A stretch of DNA of 63,633 nucleotides, filler included, from Reticulomyxa filosa (taxonomy: Eukaryota; Protista; Foraminifera): assembly GCA_000512085.1 (NCBI GenBank). It is 18 parts of 18 records of this genome, joined end to end, with 100 filler letters (N's around TTAATTAATTAA, not from the genome) between each part and the next. Parts side by side here need not be neighbours in the genome. Positions count along the whole stretch, not along the records: positions 21,820 to 27,093 come from ASPP01009013.1; 17 more parts are not named here. The stretch is one strand, 5' to 3'. Positions 751-27,093 of this stretch are shown in pieces. The notes beneath the pieces are model-generated. The model saw only the letters and a list, made by a program, of their open reading frames with translations, ran no database searches and had not been told where the DNA came from. Both the position numbers and the translations under genes were made by a program. The stretch's first letter is position 1, and each line of letters begins with the position of its first letter.

Positions 751-2660
751 TCAACTGTCTAAAGAGTTTATTGAAAAAAAAAAAATACAAAAGTTCCACC
801 ACAGAAAAAATTTGGCAAATTTTTGTTTATACGTGAATTTTTTTTTTAATTTTGAAACATATAAACATGACAATATTGTTAAAAAATAAAATAAAGTATT
901 ACATGCGCACGAGTGTACATGCAAAATGCACCAGTATACGTAACGAGTAAGCAGGGGGATGGAAGAAAAAAAAAAGTACTGTATTGAAAAGTGTTGAACG
1001 AAAGAAGCACAAAATCGTAAGATTTCGTCGGCGATGACGTAGCCATCATAGTAAGAATGACGAAAGGAATTGTTAGGGATGCTGGGTTGAGCAAGTTTCC
1101 AGCGGTACAAAGTTTTGTTTTGATAAACACGAACAATATCATCAACGCAAGCATTCATTCCATATCCAAACATTATGTGCAACCATATCAACATTTTAAG
1201 CGGATCAAAAGCGGATTTTTGCGTTGCATTTACAGCGGCATATACGTCATCGTTAAATCGACGTTGGGACTTTAGTATATTGAATTCGTAGCGTTTGGAG
1301 GCAACATATTCGTCGTCGTAAAAACGAGTCAAATTGCAAACAATAATGCAATCGAGATTGACTAATTGAGCAATGTCAATGTTGCCCAAATAAATCGGAA
1401 TCTCTCCTCCCAACAATCCCGTGTAAATCTTTTCGCTGGTGTATCCATACGTAATCGTATTTTCAAAGTTGATCGAAAACTGAAAGTCGCAGAAACAAAG
1501 CGGCAACAAGTGGTGACTCGTCTTCGGACCATAATTTGTATATTTCGGATTGCGCACGTTGCACAACAGCGACGGATCTGTGCGCTGCTCCCATAAAGGG
1601 GATTGATACCCACCGATATATGTACACTGCGGCAAATGCGAGTACCTCTGCAACAGTACGTACACCAACAAATGTCGGAACAATGAGCCCATATAATAGC
1701 GCGACGAATAAAACGTTTTCGTCAATATCGCACAAAAGTAATTTTTTTCATTGTTATTATTATTATTATTATTATTGTTATTATTGTTAGAAATGATCAA
1801 ATTGCTATAATTTATTACTTGATTGTATAACTTCTTTTGCAACGGCTTGAAACAGTAGGACATGTCCCTTTGGAATATTCCTTGAATCCACAGCACTTAT
1901 ACAGTCCTGTCTCGGCCATGACTTTGTACGTTGCAAATTTATATCTACGTCGTTGCAGTCTCGATTCCGGATATTGTTCATTTCGAATACTTCTACAATC
2001 TCTTCCATTATCAATAGCTAATTGTATTTCAATGTCAAATACTCTCTTTTCTTTTTTTTTTTTAAAAAAAAGTGCTTATTTTTTGAAACTCTTTCTTTCT
2101 ACACATACAAATATACATGTATATATAATATAATGGACGCAACAGAATATTGGAATCCCAATAAGGGTTGTTGATCCACTGCTTTAAATAACGTATATTT
2201 GTGGACGGCAACACACCGACAGCATGGCAGAAAACGGTATTGGACTTGGACGAAAGCAGTTGGTCCGATTGGTTGGAATAGTCTGAAGGGAGAGGGGCTT
2301 CGACAGGAAAAGTTGGAGTGACTCCGATTTATTCTGTTTGTACCAACTCATGTAATATGGCTTCACATGTTTGACGATCTGGCTGCAATCCACCGAGAAA
2401 ATCCATTAGAATTTGTCTTTTGTCACGTCCAGTTGTGTCAATTGCTGCTTCGTAAAATCCAACAAGTCTTGGTGTGAGTAGTTGCCGGATTCATACGTGC
2501 GAGATAACCATGTGTCAATTGCTATAGTGTGCACTTCCCAATGCTGGTTTGACACTTGCAAACTCTCCATCCATTGCTTACTGTCCACAAATGCCTTGCT
2601 ATGCGAATATCTTTGAGTTGGGCATTCACCTAGTAATAAATAATAATGTGGACTCGCATC
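751..2660 (-). CDS. Glycosyltransferase family 10 (alpha-1,3/4-fucosyltransferase-like), intron-containing, possibly disrupted
   Basis: FQFSINFENTITYGYTSEKIYTGLLGGEIPIYLG matches the GT10 motif (YKFxLAFEN...YxTEK...GxxPIYxG). Upstream coding-like blocks lie at 2184-2660, with an in-frame TAA at 2406-2408. Ends are approximate. Confidence 0.8.
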
Positions 2661-3299
2661 TCTTTCTCGATTCTCATCGATTTTTTAATCATTGTTTTAA
2701 ATTATTTGTCATTTTTGTAATATGATAGTTAATGAATTTTATTTTACTTTTTATGGAAGTAGCAATTTTGTTAAGCATAAGTCGGTATTTGTGTTGTTAG
2801 CGGTTGTGTTATGTTTTTTACAAGCAGAAAAAAAAGTTGTATGCAAGAGCTGAAAAGAAGAAAGTGACTAATTATTTCGTATTAAACATAAAAGACAATA
2901 CTATAAAGTAATTCTTTCATTTTGTATTTTTCTTCTCGTTATTGTTAGCGAAATTATTGAATATTTCACTTATAGTTCCTTTTATCAAAAAGTCAATCAA
3001 AAGGGCAATGATTTCTTGAAGATAACATTAAACAACAGTTGTATTTTTTTATCATTGATTGCTATGACATCAATTTCTTAGCATCAATTTGAGAGAAAAA
3101 TTAAAAGAAATGATAAGTTTCCAAATTTTTCTGTAATATCTCTTGTCTTGCATCGTACGAGGGAAAAATCACTTAATTTGTTAAAATGAAGTAAACATGA
3201 AGCAAAAAAAGCAACTGGGTCTTAAGTATGAACCAAAGCGAGACCTTTTTTTTTCCTCAAATAGCATAATGTTTTGATATATAATATTCCAAATATAGA

Positions 3300-6200
3300 T
3301 GAAAAGATTGGAAAGGAAAAATGACACAGGTGTTAGAAGAAAGACAGTAAGATTCATGTCTCACGTATTAAACATTTCGGATTGATAAACATGTTGTAAA
3401 CACAACGATGAAAATAGGAAGTGACAATACTTGAAGCCCTTGAAAAGACAGATACGAACAAAGATGGACAAGTTAGCTGGAGTGAATTTAATCAATGATG
3501 ACTCAATTTATAGGCAATGTTAATATTGCATTTTGTATTTTGCATACCTATTGTGCATAACTCATTGAATCTCCCAGCAACAAATAAATAACAAATTGTA
3601 ACTTTGGATTTTTTAATTTGGTTGTGATTTTCGAACATTTTCCGAAACAAATAAGTTATTATTATTATGATTGTTGTTGTTATTACATAGCTATCACAAC
3701 AGCCAAGCTCGAAAGAAGAAGCAGCCAGTGCGACGGAGCTGAAAAATCAAGTACTGTTTGTTTGCATTATTCTGTTGTGTTTGACTTGGAAATGGATATA
3801 TAAATACAACACATTTGAAAGACCGAAATGGACGATATCAAAAGTCGATTCGAAAAATTCGACAGGTTTGTGTTGGAGAGGGAGATGGTACAAAAAAAAA
3901 AGGGGAGGATCAATGAATTTTTTCTTTATGTGTTAAAGTTTTTGGAAACGGGGCATGTTTGAATAGCGATGGAGACGGCAAAATTGATTTGCCTGAGTTG
4001 AAGTCTCTTCAATCTTTGGTAATTATATATATATACATACATATAAGTATATGTATAACATATATAATTTGCGTTTGCTTATTTTGATTGGAACTGAAAC
4101 AAGTACAAAGACGAGATCATAAAGGGCGTGGAAGAAGTGTTCAAAAAGATCGATAAGGGCGAATCGAAAGACTTTGAGTACAAAACCGATGCGCTTGGGA
4201 AATTCCAAACAGCGATTGATGAGTTCAAAAAGAAGAAAAATCGACTTCCCAACGCGACCAAGTTTTTGCGATACTGGAGAGCCGCCTTTGAAGACCAAGA
4301 AACAGAGGTGGACACTGGCATGTACGCGCAGTTGTCGGGGGTATACAAGGATGCAAAGGAGCTGGCCATGCAATTGAAACATAGAACCGACGATGTGTTG
4401 CAAACAAAGTTGTTGGACTCGAAGACCAAAGCAACTCTGCGAGACCTGTGGAAATGGATTGAAGAAAAGGGGCTTACCACCTTGCAAAAGTCGCAAGATA
4501 ACGACGAGGAACTCGACAAGCTGAGGCAACAGTGTGATGTTCTTTCTCAAGAGCATGCTTCACAAAAGACATCATTGGAGACACAAATGAAAATTGTATA
4601 TTTATTTATTTATTTTGATTAATTAAAACAATAAAAAATAAAAATAAAAATAATGAAATCATTGATATAGTCAGCAGAATTGGAAAAACAGCTTCTTAAC
4701 TCGCGTATTGAAGTAGAGCAATTGAAGGACCAATTACAAAGTTTTGCGGAAAACCAAGAGATCTTCCAAACCATTGAACAGCAGCTGACTCCACTGGAAA
4801 CTGATGTAAAGCAAAAGGATCAGAACTTGAATCTCGCCCAAAAAAGCTGGAAGATGTGCGCAAGCCTTCAATTCGTGTTGTGAAGAAAACCAAATGCTCA
4901 AAAGCCAACTCAATTATCTTAACGTTGTCACCGACAAATTGGGCAGAGCCCGAAGTGCTTTGGAATCTACTAATCAAGTTTTTATCTATTAAATAAATAA
5001 ATATGTATATATAAATATTTATATATTTATATACACATGTGCATATTGTATAATTAAAAAAAAAATTTACAATACAAAAACGTCTCCAAGCAGACTCATG
5101 GATTCAACGACAATAAACCAGGTCCGCCTAAGTCCTTTGCCGAGCCCAATTGTCAAAGACACGACCAGCACCAGCGCAATGCTGTTTGCCATCAACGAGC
5201 AGCGAGTGCGAATATCAACAACGTGCAAAGAACTCGCTCGCGTAGCATGATACAGGCCTTCCCTACCAATGACTTGGAGGAGGACATTAACGCAAATTAC
5301 ATCTACCGTACAGGATCGCCATCACCGAGAATATCTACGTTCAGTTGTTGTTTTTATGTGCGTGTGTGTATGTGTTTGTAATGCAAGAGAAGAGAAAGCT
5401 ATAAAAAGGTATTCCAAATAAAATAAAATTTAAAAAAAAAAAAAAAAGACGACAAAATGATCGCGATGACAAATTTGGTCAAAAAATACTAATGTTGAGA
5501 ATAATACGAAAAGACGTGAACGCGTTGAAACAAAGCAAACACTTGCCTCTTGTGGCAGAATATCAAGAGGTATGTTCACAATTCAAGTCTGTTCAACTTT
5601 GCATGATATAATGGAGAGAGAATGAGATTGGGAATGGGGATGGCAGGAAAGAAGGTAGGCAAAGAGTCAATGGACCAAAACGAACTGATTGATATCTTGC
5701 AAAATATAAAACCGGTCCTAGACATACAAGAAAACAACCAAGACCCTTCCGGTGTTAGCTCCAAAGTTGATGACTTGAAAGAGTACATTCGAGGCTCTAT
5801 TGACAAGTTGCCCCTACAATTGCAAACTACTCACTCGGCTCCTGTTCGCATTACGCTCTTACACTTATTTTATTTTGAAAAAAAAAACAATACGTACATA
5901 AAAATAAATCACTCCCGTTGCAAACTGCTAACAAAAAAAAAAGACAAGAGAAGACACCAAGTCGAAGATAGAAACGTACGGCAACGAAGAGTAAATACAA
6001 ATCGAAATAGTGCTAGATATGATCGAAACAAATAACAAAACGAAAAAACAAGCTGCGCTTGAAGACACTGAGTCGCTCAAAGAGACAAAACCAAAATAGA
6101 AAAGGTAATGGAAGAAAAAATATCGGAAACTACAAAGACTGATGCCAATACGAATGGAACATCCATTAACAACACCAATCAGGTATTACTTGCTTTTTTT

Positions 6201-21719: not shown

Positions 21720-21844
21720 NNNNNNNNNNNNNNNNNNNNNNNNNNNNNNNNNNNNNNNNNNNNTTAATTAATTAANNNNNNNNNNNNNNNNNNNNNNNNN
21801 NNNNNNNNNNNNNNNNNNNTATTTATTTATTTATTTATTTATAG

Positions 21845-22143
21845 GTGGTGCGTTGGAAGAACCTCCAGAAGACTTGAAACCGTTTTTGAAAATGCTAAAG
21901 GTGGGCGTTCCAAAAACCGCGGTGATGAATAAAATGCAGGCGGCTGGACTCGATCCTGCACTACTGGACCAATACGGCGATGGAAATCAAGCCAAAGCCG
22001 ACAATGCAAGCGCTGCTGCGAGCAGACCTCCAAATCCTATGGTGGCCGCCTTGAAGGCTAGAAATGCTGCTGCGTCATCAACTCAAGAGTCCACAGGAAG
22101 TGGAGGGCCACCTCCACCACCACCTGTTCCTCGTCCCCCTTCG
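21845..22143 (+). CDS. Exon with WASHC3/CCDC53-like helical motif and polyproline (actin-regulator or formin-like fragment)
   Basis: KPFLKMLKVGVPKTAVMNKMQAAGLDPALLD followed by GPPPPPPVP. Confidence 0.65.
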
Positions 22144-22540
22144 TAAAAAAAAAAAAAATTTGTAAAGTGTCATTGGTGTGATGTGTGATGCGTGATAATA
22201 TGTGTGTTTTTACTTGTTTTTGGTGTTTGTGAACTTCCTTTCCACTTTTTTTTTTTTTTGGATTGCTTGCAATGTGCTGGCAGCATTCCTTCACTTTAAA
22301 TAAAATTCAAAAGATAAACTTTACATCTCGTCAAAACTGCTTATACTTTGTTGCAAAATTGTTATTCAAGACAATAGTGGTCATTGCGCTACTTAGTAAA
22401 AAAAAAAAGAGGCTAGTGAATTGAAGCTTATTGCTAGTATCCAAAAATCAGCCAAAACTATAACTGAAAAAAAAAAAAAGGGGGAAAAAAAACTAGGTGA
22501 AAAGAAATTTCGAGTAATTGTTTTTTGATCTTCAAGAAGT

Positions 22541-25500
22541 ATGTCATTTCAGGCGTCAGTTTGTATTGAAAACAAAACGTATAAAGTGACACTTACCTGG
22601 TTGTCCTTAAAACTTTTGAAAGACAAAGTGAAAGAATTAATAATAACTAATCAACACAAGCCGAAAGACACCGAGTTTGATTTTACAATTAGTGATGCAA
22701 ATGGTCAACCCATTGACAATTTTTCAAAACTTCGAACTGTGTTTGAAACTAATCCTGTTAATTTTTTGGTTAATTTTGGCGACAGTTTTGTGTTGATTTG
22801 CTTTTTATTTTGAAAAAAAAAAAAAAAAAAACATTGGGACACAAATAAACAGAAAACAATGACGAAGAAAAAAAGAATTCAGAACAAAGACAAGAAGATG
22901 AAACAAAAGAAGAAAGCCAGCAAACATTGAATCAAGCTGTAGCTATTCACAAGGAAAAGAATTTGGAAAATGAAAGTAACGAGAAAGATGAAAATAAAAA
23001 AATGGAACCTGCTCAAAGCAAGGAATGGAATGAAGCAAATAAAAAAGCTCGTGGAATGGTGGAGGAAATGATTGACAAGAAACAAAAAGGAATTGTTGTT
23101 GTCGCAACAAATATTGATCAATTGGCAAAAGCAAATAAGCAACAACAATCTCAAAAGGATGTTGTTTTTTTTTTTACGATGATGATTAATTCGGCTCAAT
23201 ATATGAAAAACAAATTGGTGATTTCGCCATATACTGTTTATTTATTTCATTCCAATGTTATCACTTTTGATGATATTACGATTGATGGATGCGTTTATGT
23301 TATCGATTGCAGAGTCAATGGAATTGAAAATTGTCACATTACTCAACAAGTAATCTATACTGAAGAGGCTTGCTTTCGGCTAGGTGCTGTTCATGAAAAA
23401 CATGGAAGATATGATAAAGCAATTGAATATTATGAAAAAGCATTGAAAATTGAAATGGATAAATTGGAATCACAAAATGCAAGAATTATTGACTTATACA
23501 ATCGTGTAGGATTTACTTATAAAAAAAAGACAATATGATAAAGCAATTGAATATTTTGAAAAAGCATTACAACTTAGAATAGAGACACTGGGAGCAGATC
23601 ACATTGCTGTCTCTAATTCGTACACTACTTTAGGAAATGTTTGTAAACAAACAGAAGAATATGATAAAGCAATTGAATATTATGAAAAGTCAATAACAAT
23701 CAAAATAAATAAATTAGGACCAGATCACGCTGAACTTGAGCCTTTGTACATAGATGTGGGACTTGCTTATCAACGCAAAGGAGAAAGCAACAAAGCAATT
23801 CCATATTTTGAAAAATCTACAAAAATTTGGGCAGAAAAACCAGGTGAAGATCAAGTTGCAATTGCATCAACGCTTAATTTATTTGGGCAATCATACTTTT
23901 TGAAAGGAGAGTATGATAAAGCGATAGAATATTTTGAAAAAGAATTGAAAATACAACTGAAACAATTTGGTGAAAATGACCCATCTGTTGCAAGATCATA
24001 CAATCAATTGGGATTAGTGTTGATAAAGGGAAAAGGCCAAATAAATGAATCCAAAGAATATGCAGACAAAGCTTTGAAGATTCTAATGAATAATAAAAGT
24101 AATGATTTTGATTTGGATATTGCAAATTCATATGATATTTTGGGACTGATTTTGGAAAAAAAAGGAACAAATGACAAAGCAATTGAACATTTTGAAAAAT
24201 CATTAGAAATCAGACTAAAAAAGCTTGATAATGATGATCAAGATATTGCCTGGTCTTTTCATTATTTGTCAAATGCATTCAAAAATAAAAATGATTTGAA
24301 CAAATCGATTGAATTTGGTGAGAAAGCGTTACATTTGAGATTGAAAAAATTTGATTCTAACGATCCATGTGTTGGTGAATCATATACTCTTTTAGGAGAT
24401 ATTTATTTTGCAAAAGGAGATAAAGTTAAAGCAAAAAAGTATTATGACGATGCAATATTGATTTTTACTGAACATTTTGGTGAGAATAATCAAAAAACAC
24501 AAAATATTAAATTAGCGCTGGAAAAGATTGATCAAGTTTAACTGTCTTTGTTGTTGTTTCATTGAATTGAAATAAAAACATAAAAAAATAAAACAAAGGG
24601 AAAAGAAGAGAAAAAGAAATGGATGAAATGGTGGAAAGAAAGAAATGAAAAAGATAAATCAGAAATAATTAAACAATTTGAACAATTATCAACAACAGAT
24701 TTTGAAATGTGGTTATTACAGCAAAGTAAATGGAAGAATAATTTTAATCGTGAAAATATTTCTGCCATTTGTATTGCAATTGAATCTTATATTCACTATC
24801 ATGTTTTGTATTTTTATGTATTGCAAATAATAAAAGTATAATGAATTTTATGTGCTTTGTTTAATTAAATTGAATAGGAAAATGAAGAAAAGAAACAAGA
24901 GGAAGTTATTTGTTTATTTTTATTTTCATTTTTTTTTTATGTTTTGATAAATAACAAGAATAATTGCAAAAATAGTTTGAAGCATATCTAACAGTAAACA
25001 AAGATACAAAAACTATAAAAATGAAAGAATTAACTTTTGAAGAACTTCTTCGTCAAAGCTATTCATGTTTGAGTTCAAAAGATTTCCAAAAAATAAATAA
25101 TGAAAATTTAAAAATGCAATTGATGGATATGCAAGATAATATTATTGAATCAGATGAAGCTGTAAAAAAAGAATTTAAAAAAAATAAGCCTTCATTTAAA
25201 TTAAATTGGGTATCATTTCAACAATCAATAATAAAAGGAGAAAATAAAATAATAAAAAATGGATTAGTAATAATGATTGGTATAAGTGAATATGATAAAA
25301 ATATGGGATGGCCTAATCTTCGAAATGTAAAAGAAAAGGATATTATTAATTTTAAACAATTATTTAAAGAAGAATTGAAATATGAATTTGTATGCAATGA
25401 ATCTCCAAAAATGACAAAAGAAGAAGTTCAAGATTTTATGGATCAAATAATAATAAATTATAAACTTCGTAAAAATATAAATAGTTATGATGGATTAATA

Positions 25501-25980
25501 ATGATTGTTTGTGGACATGGAGATGATGGAAATGTATTAGTAACAAGTGATGGAAAATATGTATCAATTGATAAAATACGAGCTTCATTTAATTGTCATG
25601 AAATGGAATCATTCAAAAATTTTCCTAAAATATTTATTATTGATGCTTGTCGTGGTCAAAATATTCCAAAATCACATGAAATTGTAATGAGAGGAAATGA
25701 AAATGCAAATAAAAACTTGCCAATATATGGGCATAATGATGATGGTTTTTTAACTATTTGGTCAACAACTAAAGGATTTCAAGTTGGTGATTTGTCTTTA
25801 TTAAGTAAAAATATTAAAGATATTGTTATATCTAAATATAAAACTGGCTATCCTTTTAAACAAATGTTACAAGATATTCGAAAAGAGATTCGCAACAGTA
25901 AAAGTGGTGAATTGTATTGTGTGGAAAGTCAAGACACTACTTCTTATGACATTGTTTTTTCTGCAAGAAAAATCTATTAA
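22541..25980 (+). CDS. PB1-like / 9x TPR / helical domain / PB1-like / caspase-like (peptidase C14) fusion protein
   Basis: Predicted exons 22541-22784, 22853-24535, 24599-24802, 24878-24904 and 24976-25980. All junctions are GT..AG and in frame, with one 1-nt shift in the A8 run at 23521-23528. Catalytic His in CGHG (25516) and Cys in DACRG (25648). Confidence 0.8.
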
Positions 25981-26377
25981 AACACATTTCTTTTTTTTTT
26001 AAAAAGGACACGTCTGATTTGTGTTGTAAAGGTTACATTTTTTCAATTTGATGTTTAGCGCCTAATCAGGAATAGAAGGAAGGGTACAACAAACATATTA
26101 CTTTCGGCATTTTAAGTCCGCGTAATGTAATTTGCACACCGTTTTTTTTTTGTACTAATTGATACCACATCAATTTCTGCCAAATTTGAATTGAGCATAA
26201 TTGTTTCGTTCTTTTGCCTTCCTTTTCACTTTCAACCCTCAGACAAATTCGAAACTGAAAGTACAAAAATAAGTGAGTGTGTTTGTCCTTCAACTTTACA
26301 ATAGAAGCTCTTTTTAAGGAAAAAAAACGCTACCGCATAAAAAAAAACTTGATAGAAATAAACAATCAAAAAAAAAA

Positions 26378-27093
26378 ATGAATGAAGCAATGAAAAGAGA
26401 ACTTAACACTAAACTTTTTGAAAACGAAGAATTGAAAGGAGATTTGGAATTACCTGGGGAAATGGACAAGCGACTCAAAGACATTTCTACATTGGAACGA
26501 CGAGGCAAATCAAAAAACATCAATATGCCAATACACCATAAGGAAAAAAAAAACCTAAGTGTTGAAGATAAAAGCAATGAAGATGAACAAAAACACGGCA
26601 ACAATGACAATAAAAACACTTTGTTGTCATCTTCATTTCTTTCTGACAATTCACTAGTGACCCTCAAAGGACACAAGAATTATGTATGGAGCGTTGACTA
26701 TTTGCCATTTGATGATCGGCATTATCTTTGTTCTGGATCAGAGGATAACAAAATTTGTGTATGGGATATTGACAACGCTGAAAAATTGAACATTTTGAAT
26801 ATGCATTCGAGTTATGTGTTTTGTGTGAAATTTTCACCGTATCATACCAGTCCTACGATTTGTTCAGCATCGTGGGACAAAACCATTCGTTTCTGGGATT
26901 TGAAAGCGTCTGAAGAAATTCAAATATTGAATGAACACACAAATGGTGTTTGTAGTATTCAATTTTCGCCATTTAATGGTGGTCGATATTTATGTTCTGG
27001 ATCGGGTGATAATACCATTCGGTTATGGGATATGGAGATGAGTAAATCGTTACATGTTTTCAATGGACATGAAGATTATGTTTGGTGTGTTGA
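26378..27093 (+). CDS. WD40-repeat protein (3' truncated)
   Basis: Repeated GH...VWSV...LCSGSEDNKICVWD / ICSASWDKTIRFWD / LCSGSGDNTIRLWD. Confidence 0.92.

What the first reader, a model, noticed from the sequence alone, without database searches (positions are those of the whole stretch)
22541..25980. Hidden single gene: TPR sensor array fused to a caspase-like protease
Seen in sequence: the apparent stop of the TPR ORF (GTT TAA at 24536-24541) is a GT donor. A 63-nt intron (24536-24598) joins ...KIDQ to GKEEKKKWMKWW in frame. Two further phase-0 introns (24803-24877 and 24905-24975) lead into a C14 domain with intact HG and DACRG motifs. Established knowledge: DACRG is caspase/paracaspase-like rather than the DSCHSG of metacaspases, and 42-aa TPR arrays serve as sensor domains in fungal and invertebrate NLRs. 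Inference: a one-component ligand-activated protease for defence or cell death in a protist.
Basis: partly seen in the sequence, partly recalled or inferred. Interest (0 to 1): 0.85.

Follow-up and report, generated by a model that had tools for sequence, protein, structure and literature searches.

The report
TPR–caspase-like fusion gene, already annotated
This stretch of the foraminiferan Reticulomyxa filosa really does encode one spliced gene joining a TPR repeat array to a caspase-like protease, but the join is already in the public annotation, it is one of many such fusions in this organism, and this copy carries a frame break that may make it a pseudogene.

Summary
The piece is identical to Reticulomyxa filosa contig ASPP01009013.1. 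All are 63-75 nt, start GTT and end AG, and paralogues support each one. The first join (…LALEKIDQ|GKEEKKKWMKWW…) already stands in GenBank protein RFI_12441 (729 aa, TPR_12 + Peptidase_C14), so the gene is not hidden. At least seven other annotated R. filosa proteins combine TPR and C14, and others combine Kelch and C14.

I add three things.
- **Gene extent.** The gene starts further upstream, at ATG 22541, with a 68-nt intron. That gives five exons and about 1,050 codons. The order is beta-grasp, small beta domain, KLC-type TPR array, helical "KWW" module, second beta-grasp, C14.
- **Specificity.** The protease resembles animal caspases in fold and sequence, but two of the three S1 residues that bind aspartate are themselves Asp. 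The inter-subunit linker keeps a conserved Arg/Lys-Gly. Cleavage after Arg/Lys therefore looks more likely than after Asp.

The frame break in the A8 run 23521-23528 is present in the assembly. No RNA run was listed, so expression and the break remain untested. A ligand-activated defence or death role is inference only, and no NTPase domain is present.

The parts
22541..22784 (+). Exon 1: start codon and N-terminal beta-grasp-like domain (MSFQASVCIENKTYKVTL...); ends in phase 1
   Evidence: 41% identical to the N-terminus of P0198 (E = 1e-17). Same start MSFQASV in P0187, P0192 and P0205. The equivalent region of paralogue P0187 models as beta-beta-alpha-beta-alpha-beta.
22785..22852 (+). Intron 1, 68 nt, GTTTTG...ACAG, phase 1
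   Evidence: Splicing gives ...NFGD-K-NNDEE, matching P0189 ...FIDKNNDEE and P0187 ...FINKNNDEE. GC is 22% against 30-32% in the flanking exons.
22853..23520 (+). Exon 2, first part: acidic linker, conserved small beta-rich N-domain (GIVVVATNIDQ...ITIDGCVYVIDC...HITQQ), first TPR
   Evidence: Aligned with 20 paralogues. No Pfam family. This copy lacks about 70 residues that all paralogues have between the N-domain and the first TPR.
23521..23528 (+). A8 homopolymer where the reading frame changes; the upstream frame then stops at TGA 23536-23538
   Evidence: GenBank splits the locus here into two gene models: L007 453-1719 and 1818-4161.
23522..24535 (+). Exon 2, second part: KLC-type TPR_12 array, ending ...LALEKIDQ
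   Evidence: TPR_12 229.9 bits in 6 stretches. C-terminal repeats align with P0057, P0187 and P0188. The TPR part of the paralogue model matches kinesin light chain TPR (Z 15.5, rmsd 1.2, 96 aligned).
24536..24598 (+). Intron 2, 63 nt, GTTTAA...AAAG, phase 0; holds the in-frame TAA at 24539-24541
   Evidence: Same junction as GenBank RFI_12441. A donor at the same codon boundary occurs in six paralogous loci.
24599..24802 (+). Exon 3: 'KWW' module, function unknown, taken as helical from its sequence pattern only
   Evidence: 70% identical to P0052 (E = 3e-32). Present in TPR-C14, Kelch-C14 and short C14 paralogues. No Pfam or Atlas match.
24803..24877 (+). Intron 3, 75 nt, GTTTTG...ATAG, phase 0
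   Evidence: The GenBank model instead reads into it (VLYFYVLQIIK), which has no counterpart in paralogues.
24878..24904 (+). Exon 4: 27-nt microexon ENEEKKQEE
   Evidence: Counterparts are NNEEKKEEKEQE in P0188/L009, SNQDHKQEKKENE in L008 and NNQDHKEEKKENE in P0189. In the two loci read as DNA (L008, L009) it is followed by a GTT donor.
24905..24975 (+). Intron 4, 71 nt, GTTATT...ATAG, phase 0
   Evidence: GC is 14%.
24976..25980 (+). Exon 5: second beta-grasp (about residues 1-80) plus the caspase-like C14 domain, then stop TAA. His 25516-25518, Cys 25648-25650, Asp of DACRG 25642-25644, Asp at the caspase-3 Arg207 position 25789-25791
   Evidence: The leader xxAYxxVxxxxKxIK upstream of ATG 25021 is conserved in 22 paralogues, several of which lack a Met at that position. 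AlphaFold model mean pLDDT 88.6. Foldseek matches caspases. Pfam PF00656. Pocket columns.

Best explanation
Window 22541-25980 (+) is one five-exon gene of Reticulomyxa filosa.

**Shown here.**
- The domain order is N-terminal beta-grasp, small beta-rich domain of unknown fold, kinesin-light-chain-type TPR array, about 60-residue 'KWW' module, second beta-grasp, caspase-like C14 protease.
- It belongs to a large foraminiferan family in which the same C14 unit is attached to TPR, Kelch, WD40-type or kinase modules.
- The protease has the caspase fold and an intact His-Cys dyad.
- Its S1 pocket carries Asp at two of the three positions that are Arg/Gln/Arg in Asp-specific caspases.
- The linker between its large and small parts has a conserved Arg/Lys-Gly.

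**Inferred.**
- The enzyme most likely cleaves after Arg/Lys, like paracaspases and metacaspases, and may process itself at that linker.
- The TPR array binds a protein or peptide ligand. Binding or ligand-driven clustering would then bring protease domains together and switch them on, as induced proximity does for initiator caspases.

**Open.**
- The assembly has a frame break in an A8 run inside the TPR array.
- If that is a homopolymer sequencing error, the gene is intact. If it is real, this copy is a recent pseudogene, or makes only truncated products.
For: **Identity.** The piece equals contig ASPP01009013.1. GenBank RFI_12441 already joins TPR to C14 at 24535/24599.

**Single gene.**
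- Only 81 nt lie between TAA 24541 and ATG 24623, against 394 and 397 nt for the two true intergenic gaps.
- Six paralogous loci have a GT donor at the same codon boundary and an in-phase, stop-free acceptor, despite different raw frame offsets.
- Four of the six have no ATG in the downstream exon.
- Paralogue P0187 (1101 aa) has the same full architecture.
- ATG 25021 is not a conserved start.

**Constraint.** dN/dS against paralogues is 0.2-0.55 for every part, on both sides of the break.

**Protease.**
- Pfam C14. Profile hit to caspase-3 at E = 1e-18.
- Model mean pLDDT 88.6. Foldseek top hits are caspase-9, CED-3, caspase-8 and caspase-3.
- His and Cys are near-invariant in 39 sequences. 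Asp is conserved two residues before the Cys and at the caspase-3 Arg207 column.
- [RK]-G is conserved in a low-confidence linker with no conserved Asp.
- The S1 logic for caspase-7 (Arg87/Gln184/Arg233) against MALT1 (Asp365/Asp462/Glu500) comes from PMC4357240.

**Family breadth.** Kelch+C14 and RGS+kinase+C14 proteins occur in the EukProt protein set of Bolivina argentea.
Against: - No RNA evidence: no sequencing run was listed, so splicing and expression are inferred from comparison only.
- The frame break at 23521-23528 is in the assembly. This copy also lacks about 70 residues that all paralogues have. Both fit a decaying copy.
- The stop right after the donor is kept in all six paralogues, with three different stop codons. 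A genuine TPR-only end would look the same.
- In this copy and its closest paralogue, the first S1 position is Arg, as in caspases. The pocket is therefore mixed, and specificity cannot be read off with certainty.
- Nothing shows that the TPR array binds a ligand or controls the protease.
Confidence: 0.8

Rival explanations
1. There are two neighbouring genes. A TPR-only gene ends at TAA 24539-24541. A separate caspase-like gene starts at ATG 24623 (MKWW...) and has two introns.
For: - The in-frame stop directly after the last TPR codon is kept in six paralogues, using TAA, TGA and TAG.
- An ATG is present at 24623 in this copy.
- Several annotated paralogues (P0001, P0008) begin at MKWW/MEWW.
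- P0002 has no repeat domain gene upstream on the same strand.
Against: - The gap would be 81 nt, against about 395 nt for real intergenic spacers here.
- The KWW exon has no ATG in L008 and L011, and in L010 only within the AT-rich stretch just upstream of it. The downstream exons of L006 and L009 have none.
- P0002 has Ile in place of the Met.
- GenBank itself joins the two parts in RFI_12441, RFI_00725, RFI_29501, RFI_04677 and RFI_02778.
- The 'MKWW' start in L003 sits 147 nt after a Kelch ORF, and the Kelch-KWW join is annotated in P0005.
Confidence: 0.08
2. The architecture is that of a single fusion gene, but this copy is dead. The one-base-class frame break in the A8 run is real, and only a truncated N-terminal product, or nothing, is made.
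For: - The frame break is in the assembly.
- There is an internal loss of about 70 residues relative to 20 paralogues.
- The family is large and fast-evolving, and many members are fragmentary.
- No RNA run was listed.
Against: - This is the only break in about 3.1 kb of AT-rich coding sequence.
- The five other A runs of 7-8 bases in the exons are in frame.
- All four introns keep GT..AG.
- The catalytic residues are intact.
- dN/dS is 0.30-0.44 on both sides of the break.
- Long homopolymers are a classic source of consensus errors in draft assemblies. The chemistry used for this assembly could not be checked here, because the genome paper is not in the library.
Confidence: 0.35
3. The protein is a true Asp-specific caspase, as suggested by its grouping with animal caspases, and it acts in an apoptosis-like pathway.
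For: - The best sequence and fold matches are animal caspases.
- Klim et al. 2018 place Reticulomyxa proteases with animal caspases at 92-95% bootstrap.
- The Arg aligned with caspase-3 Arg64 is present in this copy.
Against: - The Gln of QACXG is Asp, and the Arg207 column is Asp, in nearly all family members.
- The Arg64 column is variable in the family (R, K, P, E, S, D).
- The linker has a conserved Arg/Lys-Gly and no conserved Asp.
Confidence: 0.2

Closest known systems
GenBank RFI_12441 and its R. filosa paralogues RFI_00725, RFI_29501, RFI_04677, RFI_02778 (hypothetical proteins; UniProt 'Caspase family p20 domain-containing protein')
   Same: RFI_12441 is the same locus with the same TPR-to-KWW junction. 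RFI_00725 has the same full architecture: beta-grasp, N-domain, TPR, KWW, C14.
   Different: - The public model of this locus starts at an out-of-frame ATG downstream of the frame break.
- It misses exon 1 and the N-domain.
- It reads into introns 3 and 4 and so loses the conserved FEAYLTV strand.
Animal caspases (MEROPS C14A), e.g. caspase-3, -8, -9, CED-3
   Same: - Caspase fold, His-Cys dyad and xACRG active-site motif.
- A large and a small part separated by a flexible linker.
- Best sequence and structure matches.
   Different: - S1 Gln and second S1 Arg are replaced by Asp.
- There is no CARD or DED prodomain. The prodomain is a beta-grasp, preceded by TPR and KWW modules.
- The linker has Arg/Lys-Gly rather than Asp sites.
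Paracaspase MALT1 and metacaspases (MEROPS C14B)
   Same: Acidic residues at the S1 positions two before the catalytic Cys and on loop L5, which give Arg/Lys specificity in MALT1 (PMC4357240).
   Different: - Overall sequence and fold matches are better to caspases.
- There is no DSCHSG motif and no death or Ig domains.
- The first S1 position is not a conserved acid.
Prokaryotic caspase homologues (orthocaspases) fused to TPR, WD40 or Sel1 repeats, and TPR-CHAT/Csx29 of type III-E CRISPR systems
   Same: A clan CD caspase-like protease in one polypeptide with a TPR array. In Csx29 the protease is switched on through its partner complex (PMC3501461, PMC11089037, PMC9825189).
   Different: - This one is eukaryotic and spliced.
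- The protease is Peptidase_C14, not CHAT.
- The TPR array is N-terminal to the protease, with extra KWW and beta-grasp modules.
- There is no CRISPR partner.
Fungal and animal NLR/STAND receptors with TPR sensor arrays
   Same: 42-residue TPR_10/TPR_12-type repeats that could serve as a recognition surface. The family is large and variable.
   Different: No NACHT, NB-ARC or other NTPase domain was found in any part. The domain order is also the reverse of effector-NOD-repeat.

Membership tests
Peptidase C14 (clan CD, caspase fold) | Significant match to Pfam PF00656 | tested here: met
   70.2 bits against a cut-off of 21.4, residues 81-305 of the 319-aa ORF.
Peptidase C14 (clan CD, caspase fold) | Catalytic His-Cys dyad in the conserved positions | tested here: met
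   GHG (His, codon 25516-25518) and DACRG (Cys, codon 25648-25650). Both are near-invariant in 36-39 aligned relatives.
Peptidase C14 (clan CD, caspase fold) | Caspase/hemoglobinase fold | tested here: met
   AlphaFold model mean pLDDT 88.6. Foldseek probability 1.0 and target TM 0.75-0.79 to caspase-9, -8, -3 and CED-3.
Caspases in the strict sense (C14A, Asp-specific) | Basic S1 triad Arg-Gln-Arg (caspase-7 Arg87/Gln184/Arg233) | tested here: not met
   The Gln position is Asp (DACRG). The second Arg position (caspase-3 Arg207 column) is Asp. The first Arg is present here but variable in the family (PMC4357240).
Caspases in the strict sense (C14A, Asp-specific) | Closest relatives are animal caspases | tested here: met
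   The 60 PDB sequence matches listed (of 179) and the 50 fold matches listed are all caspases or CED-3. Klim et al. 2018 report the same grouping.
Metacaspases / paracaspases (C14B) | Acidic S1 pocket and Arg/Lys specificity | tested here: inconclusive
   Two of the three pocket positions are Asp, and the linker keeps [RK]-G. Specificity itself needs an enzyme assay.
NLR / STAND receptors | Central P-loop NTPase (NACHT, NB-ARC or similar) | tested here: not met
   No NTPase family was found in any exon by Pfam, even at E up to 5 for the N-terminal parts. No Walker A motif is visible in the N-domain.
Kinesin-light-chain-type TPR (Pfam TPR_12) | Repeated TPR_12 matches and KLC-like superhelix | tested here: met
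   TPR_12 229.9 bits in 6 stretches. The first repeats of paralogue P0187 match KLC1/KLC2 TPR at Z 15.4-15.5, rmsd 1.2-1.3.
TPR-CHAT (Csx29) | CHAT protease domain (PF12770) | tested here: not met
   The protease part matches PF00656 only. CHAT appears only in unrelated bacterial TPR proteins, which were picked up through their repeats.

The most novel reading that the evidence does not exclude
Foraminifera hold a large family of proteases that are caspases by descent and fold but have an acidic, Arg/Lys-type pocket. Each is wired in one polypeptide to a different recognition module (TPR, Kelch, WD40, kinase) through shared KWW and beta-grasp adaptors. That would be an NTPase-free, one-component sensing and proteolysis system for non-self recognition or cell death in a giant syncytial protist. 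The stop codon kept inside the donor of the TPR-C14 intron would let intron retention produce a TPR-only decoy or regulator.
Probability: 0.2. Interest if true: 0.75.

Novelty: new variant of a known kind. Interest (0 to 1): 0.45.

Why it matters
Reticulomyxa proteases are cited as evidence that caspases predate animals, and they serve as outgroups in caspase trees (PMC5982838, PMC10959488). Suppose they have the caspase fold but an acidic S1 pocket and an Arg/Lys processing site. Then 'caspase by phylogeny' and 'Asp-specific by chemistry' come apart, and the origin of Asp specificity could be tested with one recombinant domain.

The family also shows modular fusions of a death-type protease to repeat arrays without a STAND NTPase. 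That is a simpler design than apoptosomes, inflammasomes or fungal NLRs.

For annotation, the locus shows how one homopolymer break and mis-called short AT-rich introns split and distort a gene of about 1,050 codons.

Tried and rejected
- **Joined protein.** Every search used single exons by reference or database paralogues.
- **KWW module.** No Pfam family even at E = 5 and no Atlas neighbour.
- **N-domain.** No Pfam family. The wide structure search of the paralogue model was filled by TPR matches (residues 227-330), so the beta-rich domain (about 125-220) was effectively not tested.
- **Beta-grasp duplication.** A duplicated origin for the two beta-grasp units is not supported by sequence (E = 0.61). 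They are alike only in predicted secondary structure.
- **Genome paper.** The R. filosa genome paper is not in the library, so the sequencing chemistry behind the A8 run could not be checked.
- **Literature.** Searches found no paper that discusses TPR- or Kelch-caspase fusions in foraminifera.
- **ATG 25021.** I considered it as the true start of the protease and rejected it. The conserved leader extends upstream, and the Met is replaced in several paralogues.
Full report
**Source and public status.** The finding's piece (window 21820-27093) is base-for-base identical to Reticulomyxa filosa contig ASPP01009013.1, assembly GCA_000512085.1.
- A 369-aa TPR protein sits at locus positions 453-1719 (window 22272-23538).
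- RFI_12441 (P0197, 729 aa) sits at 1818-4161 (window 23637-25980). It carries TPR_12 and Peptidase_C14.
- P0197 reads ...LALEKIDQGKEEKKKWMKWW....

The fusion of TPR and caspase-like domains at this locus is therefore already public. It is annotated only as a hypothetical protein.

**The observation.**
- Pfam confirms a TPR_12 array (229.9 bits) and a C14 domain (70.2 bits against a cut-off of 21.4).
They are 14-22% GC against 24-32% in the exons. All start GTT and end AG.
- The frame break lies in an A8 run at 23521-23528. The upstream frame then meets TGA at 23536-23538, which is where GenBank ends its first model.

**One gene or two?** No RNA run was listed, so the test is comparative. I read six paralogous loci: L006, L007 (the window), L008, L009, L010 and L011.
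- In all six, the codon after the last TPR codon (...EKI[DN][QEG]) is GTT followed by a stop, giving a donor GTTT[AG][AG].
- The conserved next exon lies 79-97 nt downstream, in raw frame offsets 0, 0, 1, 2, 2 and 1.
- In each locus an in-phase, stop-free GT..AG intron reaches it. The intron is 63-83 nt in five loci and 37 nt in L010.
- In four of the six loci, the open frame leading into that exon contains no Met. Such an exon cannot start a gene of its own.
- The spacer in the window would be 81 nt, whereas the two real intergenic gaps on this contig are 394 and 397 nt.
- Paralogue RFI_00725 (P0187, 1101 aa) is annotated with the complete architecture.

I put the single-gene reading at about 0.9 and the two-gene reading below 0.1.

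**The gene model.**
- *Exon 1* (22541-22784) starts MSFQASV..., as do P0187, P0192 and P0205. It is 41% identical to the N-terminus of P0198 (E = 1e-17).
- *Intron 1* splices ...NFGD-K-NNDEE, which matches ...FIDKNNDEE in P0189.
- *Exon 2* (22853-24535) holds an acidic linker, a conserved beta-rich domain with no Pfam match, and the TPR array.
- *Exon 3* (24599-24802) is a 'KWW' module, 70% identical to Kelch-C14 paralogue P0052.
- *Exon 4* is a 27-nt microexon with counterparts in P0188, L008 and P0189.
- *Exon 5* (24976-25980) begins FEAYLTVNKDTKTIK, upstream of ATG 25021. This leader is conserved in 22 paralogues, and the Met is Val, Leu or Ile in several of them, so 25021 is not the start.

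GenBank's model reads into introns 3 and 4 (VLYFYVLQIIK; VICLFLFSFFFYVLINNKNNCKN) and loses FEAYLTV. All searches used single exons or database paralogues.

**The frame break.**
- It is the only disruption in about 3.1 kb of AT-rich coding sequence. Five other A runs of 7-8 bases in the exons are in frame.
- dN/dS against three paralogues is 0.30-0.44 for the parts on either side of it and 0.26-0.34 for the C14 exon. The sequence has therefore been under purifying selection for most of its history.
- A recent loss would not show in that measure.
- This copy also lacks about 70 residues that all 20 aligned paralogues have between the N-domain and the first TPR.
- I could not check the sequencing chemistry, because the genome paper is not held.

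My odds are about 0.6 assembly error and about 0.35 real break.

**The protease.**
- A profile of 36 relatives matches caspase-3 at E = 1e-18.
- An AlphaFold model of exon 5 has mean pLDDT 88.6. It shows a beta-grasp (residues 1-80) followed by a caspase fold.
- The best Foldseek matches are caspase-9, CED-3, caspase-8 and caspase-3. This agrees with Klim et al. 2018, who grouped Reticulomyxa proteases with animal caspases.
- The specificity pocket differs. In caspases, Arg, Gln and Arg on loops L1, L4 and L5 bind the P1 Asp. In MALT1 the same positions are Asp365, Asp462 and Glu500 and bind Arg (PMC4357240).
- Here the L4 position is Asp (DACRG). The L5 position, aligned without gaps to caspase-3 Arg207, is Asp (…GFQVGD). 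Both are conserved across the family.
- The L1 position is Arg in this copy but R, K, P, E, S or D elsewhere in the family.
- The modelled low-confidence linker (residues 230-252) contains a conserved [RK]-G and no conserved Asp.

I therefore predict Arg/Lys specificity (about 0.6) and self-processing at that site. Both are inferences.

**Family context.**
- R. filosa has at least 50 C14 paralogues.
- The same C14 unit follows TPR arrays (P0057, P0186-P0188, P0197) and Kelch propellers (P0005, P0052-P0054, P0059). It also follows an HSP70 fragment (P0129).
- In P0196, P0198 and P0200 the same modules come in another order: beta-grasp, C14, N-domain, TPR.
- Relatives in the EukProt protein sets of Bolivina argentea and Nonionella stella include Kelch+C14 and RGS+kinase+C14 proteins.
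- No NTPase domain is present anywhere in the window's gene, so it is not an NLR.
- The nearest designs are bacterial orthocaspases with TPR or WD40 repeats (PMC3501461) and TPR-CHAT/Csx29 (PMC11089037). These are analogies of architecture, not membership.

**Mechanism.** The architecture, the fold, the catalytic residues, the pocket residues and the conserved linker motif are shown. Three points are inferred.
- The KLC-type TPR array is a ligand-binding surface.
- Ligand binding or clustering activates the protease by proximity.
- The role is in defence, self/non-self recognition or cell death.

None of these could be tested here.

**Verdict.** The gene is real as an architecture but is not hidden. 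The points of interest are the family-wide acidic pocket in a caspase-type fold and the modular, NTPase-free fusions.

Noticed in passing
window 24536-24541; L006 1906-1911; L008 5167-5172; L009 4500-5; L010 5315-20; L011 5792-7: In six paralogous TPR loci the intron donor is GTT followed at once by an in-frame stop, and all three stop codons are used (TAA, TGA, TAG). An unspliced transcript would end as a TPR-only protein. This could be selected for, or it could just be the local donor consensus.
   Followed up: partly
P0196, P0198, P0200 (R. filosa proteins): The same modules occur in another order: beta-grasp, C14, N-domain, TPR. This points to domain shuffling within the family.
   Followed up: partly
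L003 4528-7258: A Kelch-repeat ORF ends 147 nt upstream of the MKWW exon of C14 paralogue P0001. GenBank calls two genes there, but the Kelch-KWW-C14 join is annotated in P0005, P0052 and P0053. The L003 pair is probably another split fusion gene.
   Followed up: partly
window 23370-23380 (between ...HITQQVIYTEEACFR and LGAVHEKHG...): This copy lacks about 70 residues that all 20 aligned paralogues have (…SVIxYxF…WPID…SNFDxAIxLxRF…). They lie between the N-domain and the first canonical TPR.
   Followed up: no
window 26378-27093: A WD40-repeat gene starts 397 nt downstream on the same strand and runs off the contig. In L002, C14 paralogue P0002 is likewise followed by a WD40 gene, and it is preceded on the other strand by a gene with a weak nSTAND3 match.
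   Followed up: no
window 21853-22146: This is the last exon of a CCDC53 (WASH complex subunit 3) homologue (Pfam E = 6e-10). The contig starts inside the preceding intron.
   Followed up: no
P0053 residues about 320-470: This Kelch-C14 paralogue has two KWW modules in tandem. P0129 joins an HSP70 domain to the first 76 residues of the C14 leader at a contig end.
   Followed up: no
window 23637-23720: GenBank's RFI_12441 starts at an ATG that is out of frame with the TPR repeats (MFVNKQKNMIKQLNIMK...) and uses a small intron to re-enter the frame. This looks like an artefact forced by the upstream frame break.
   Followed up: partly
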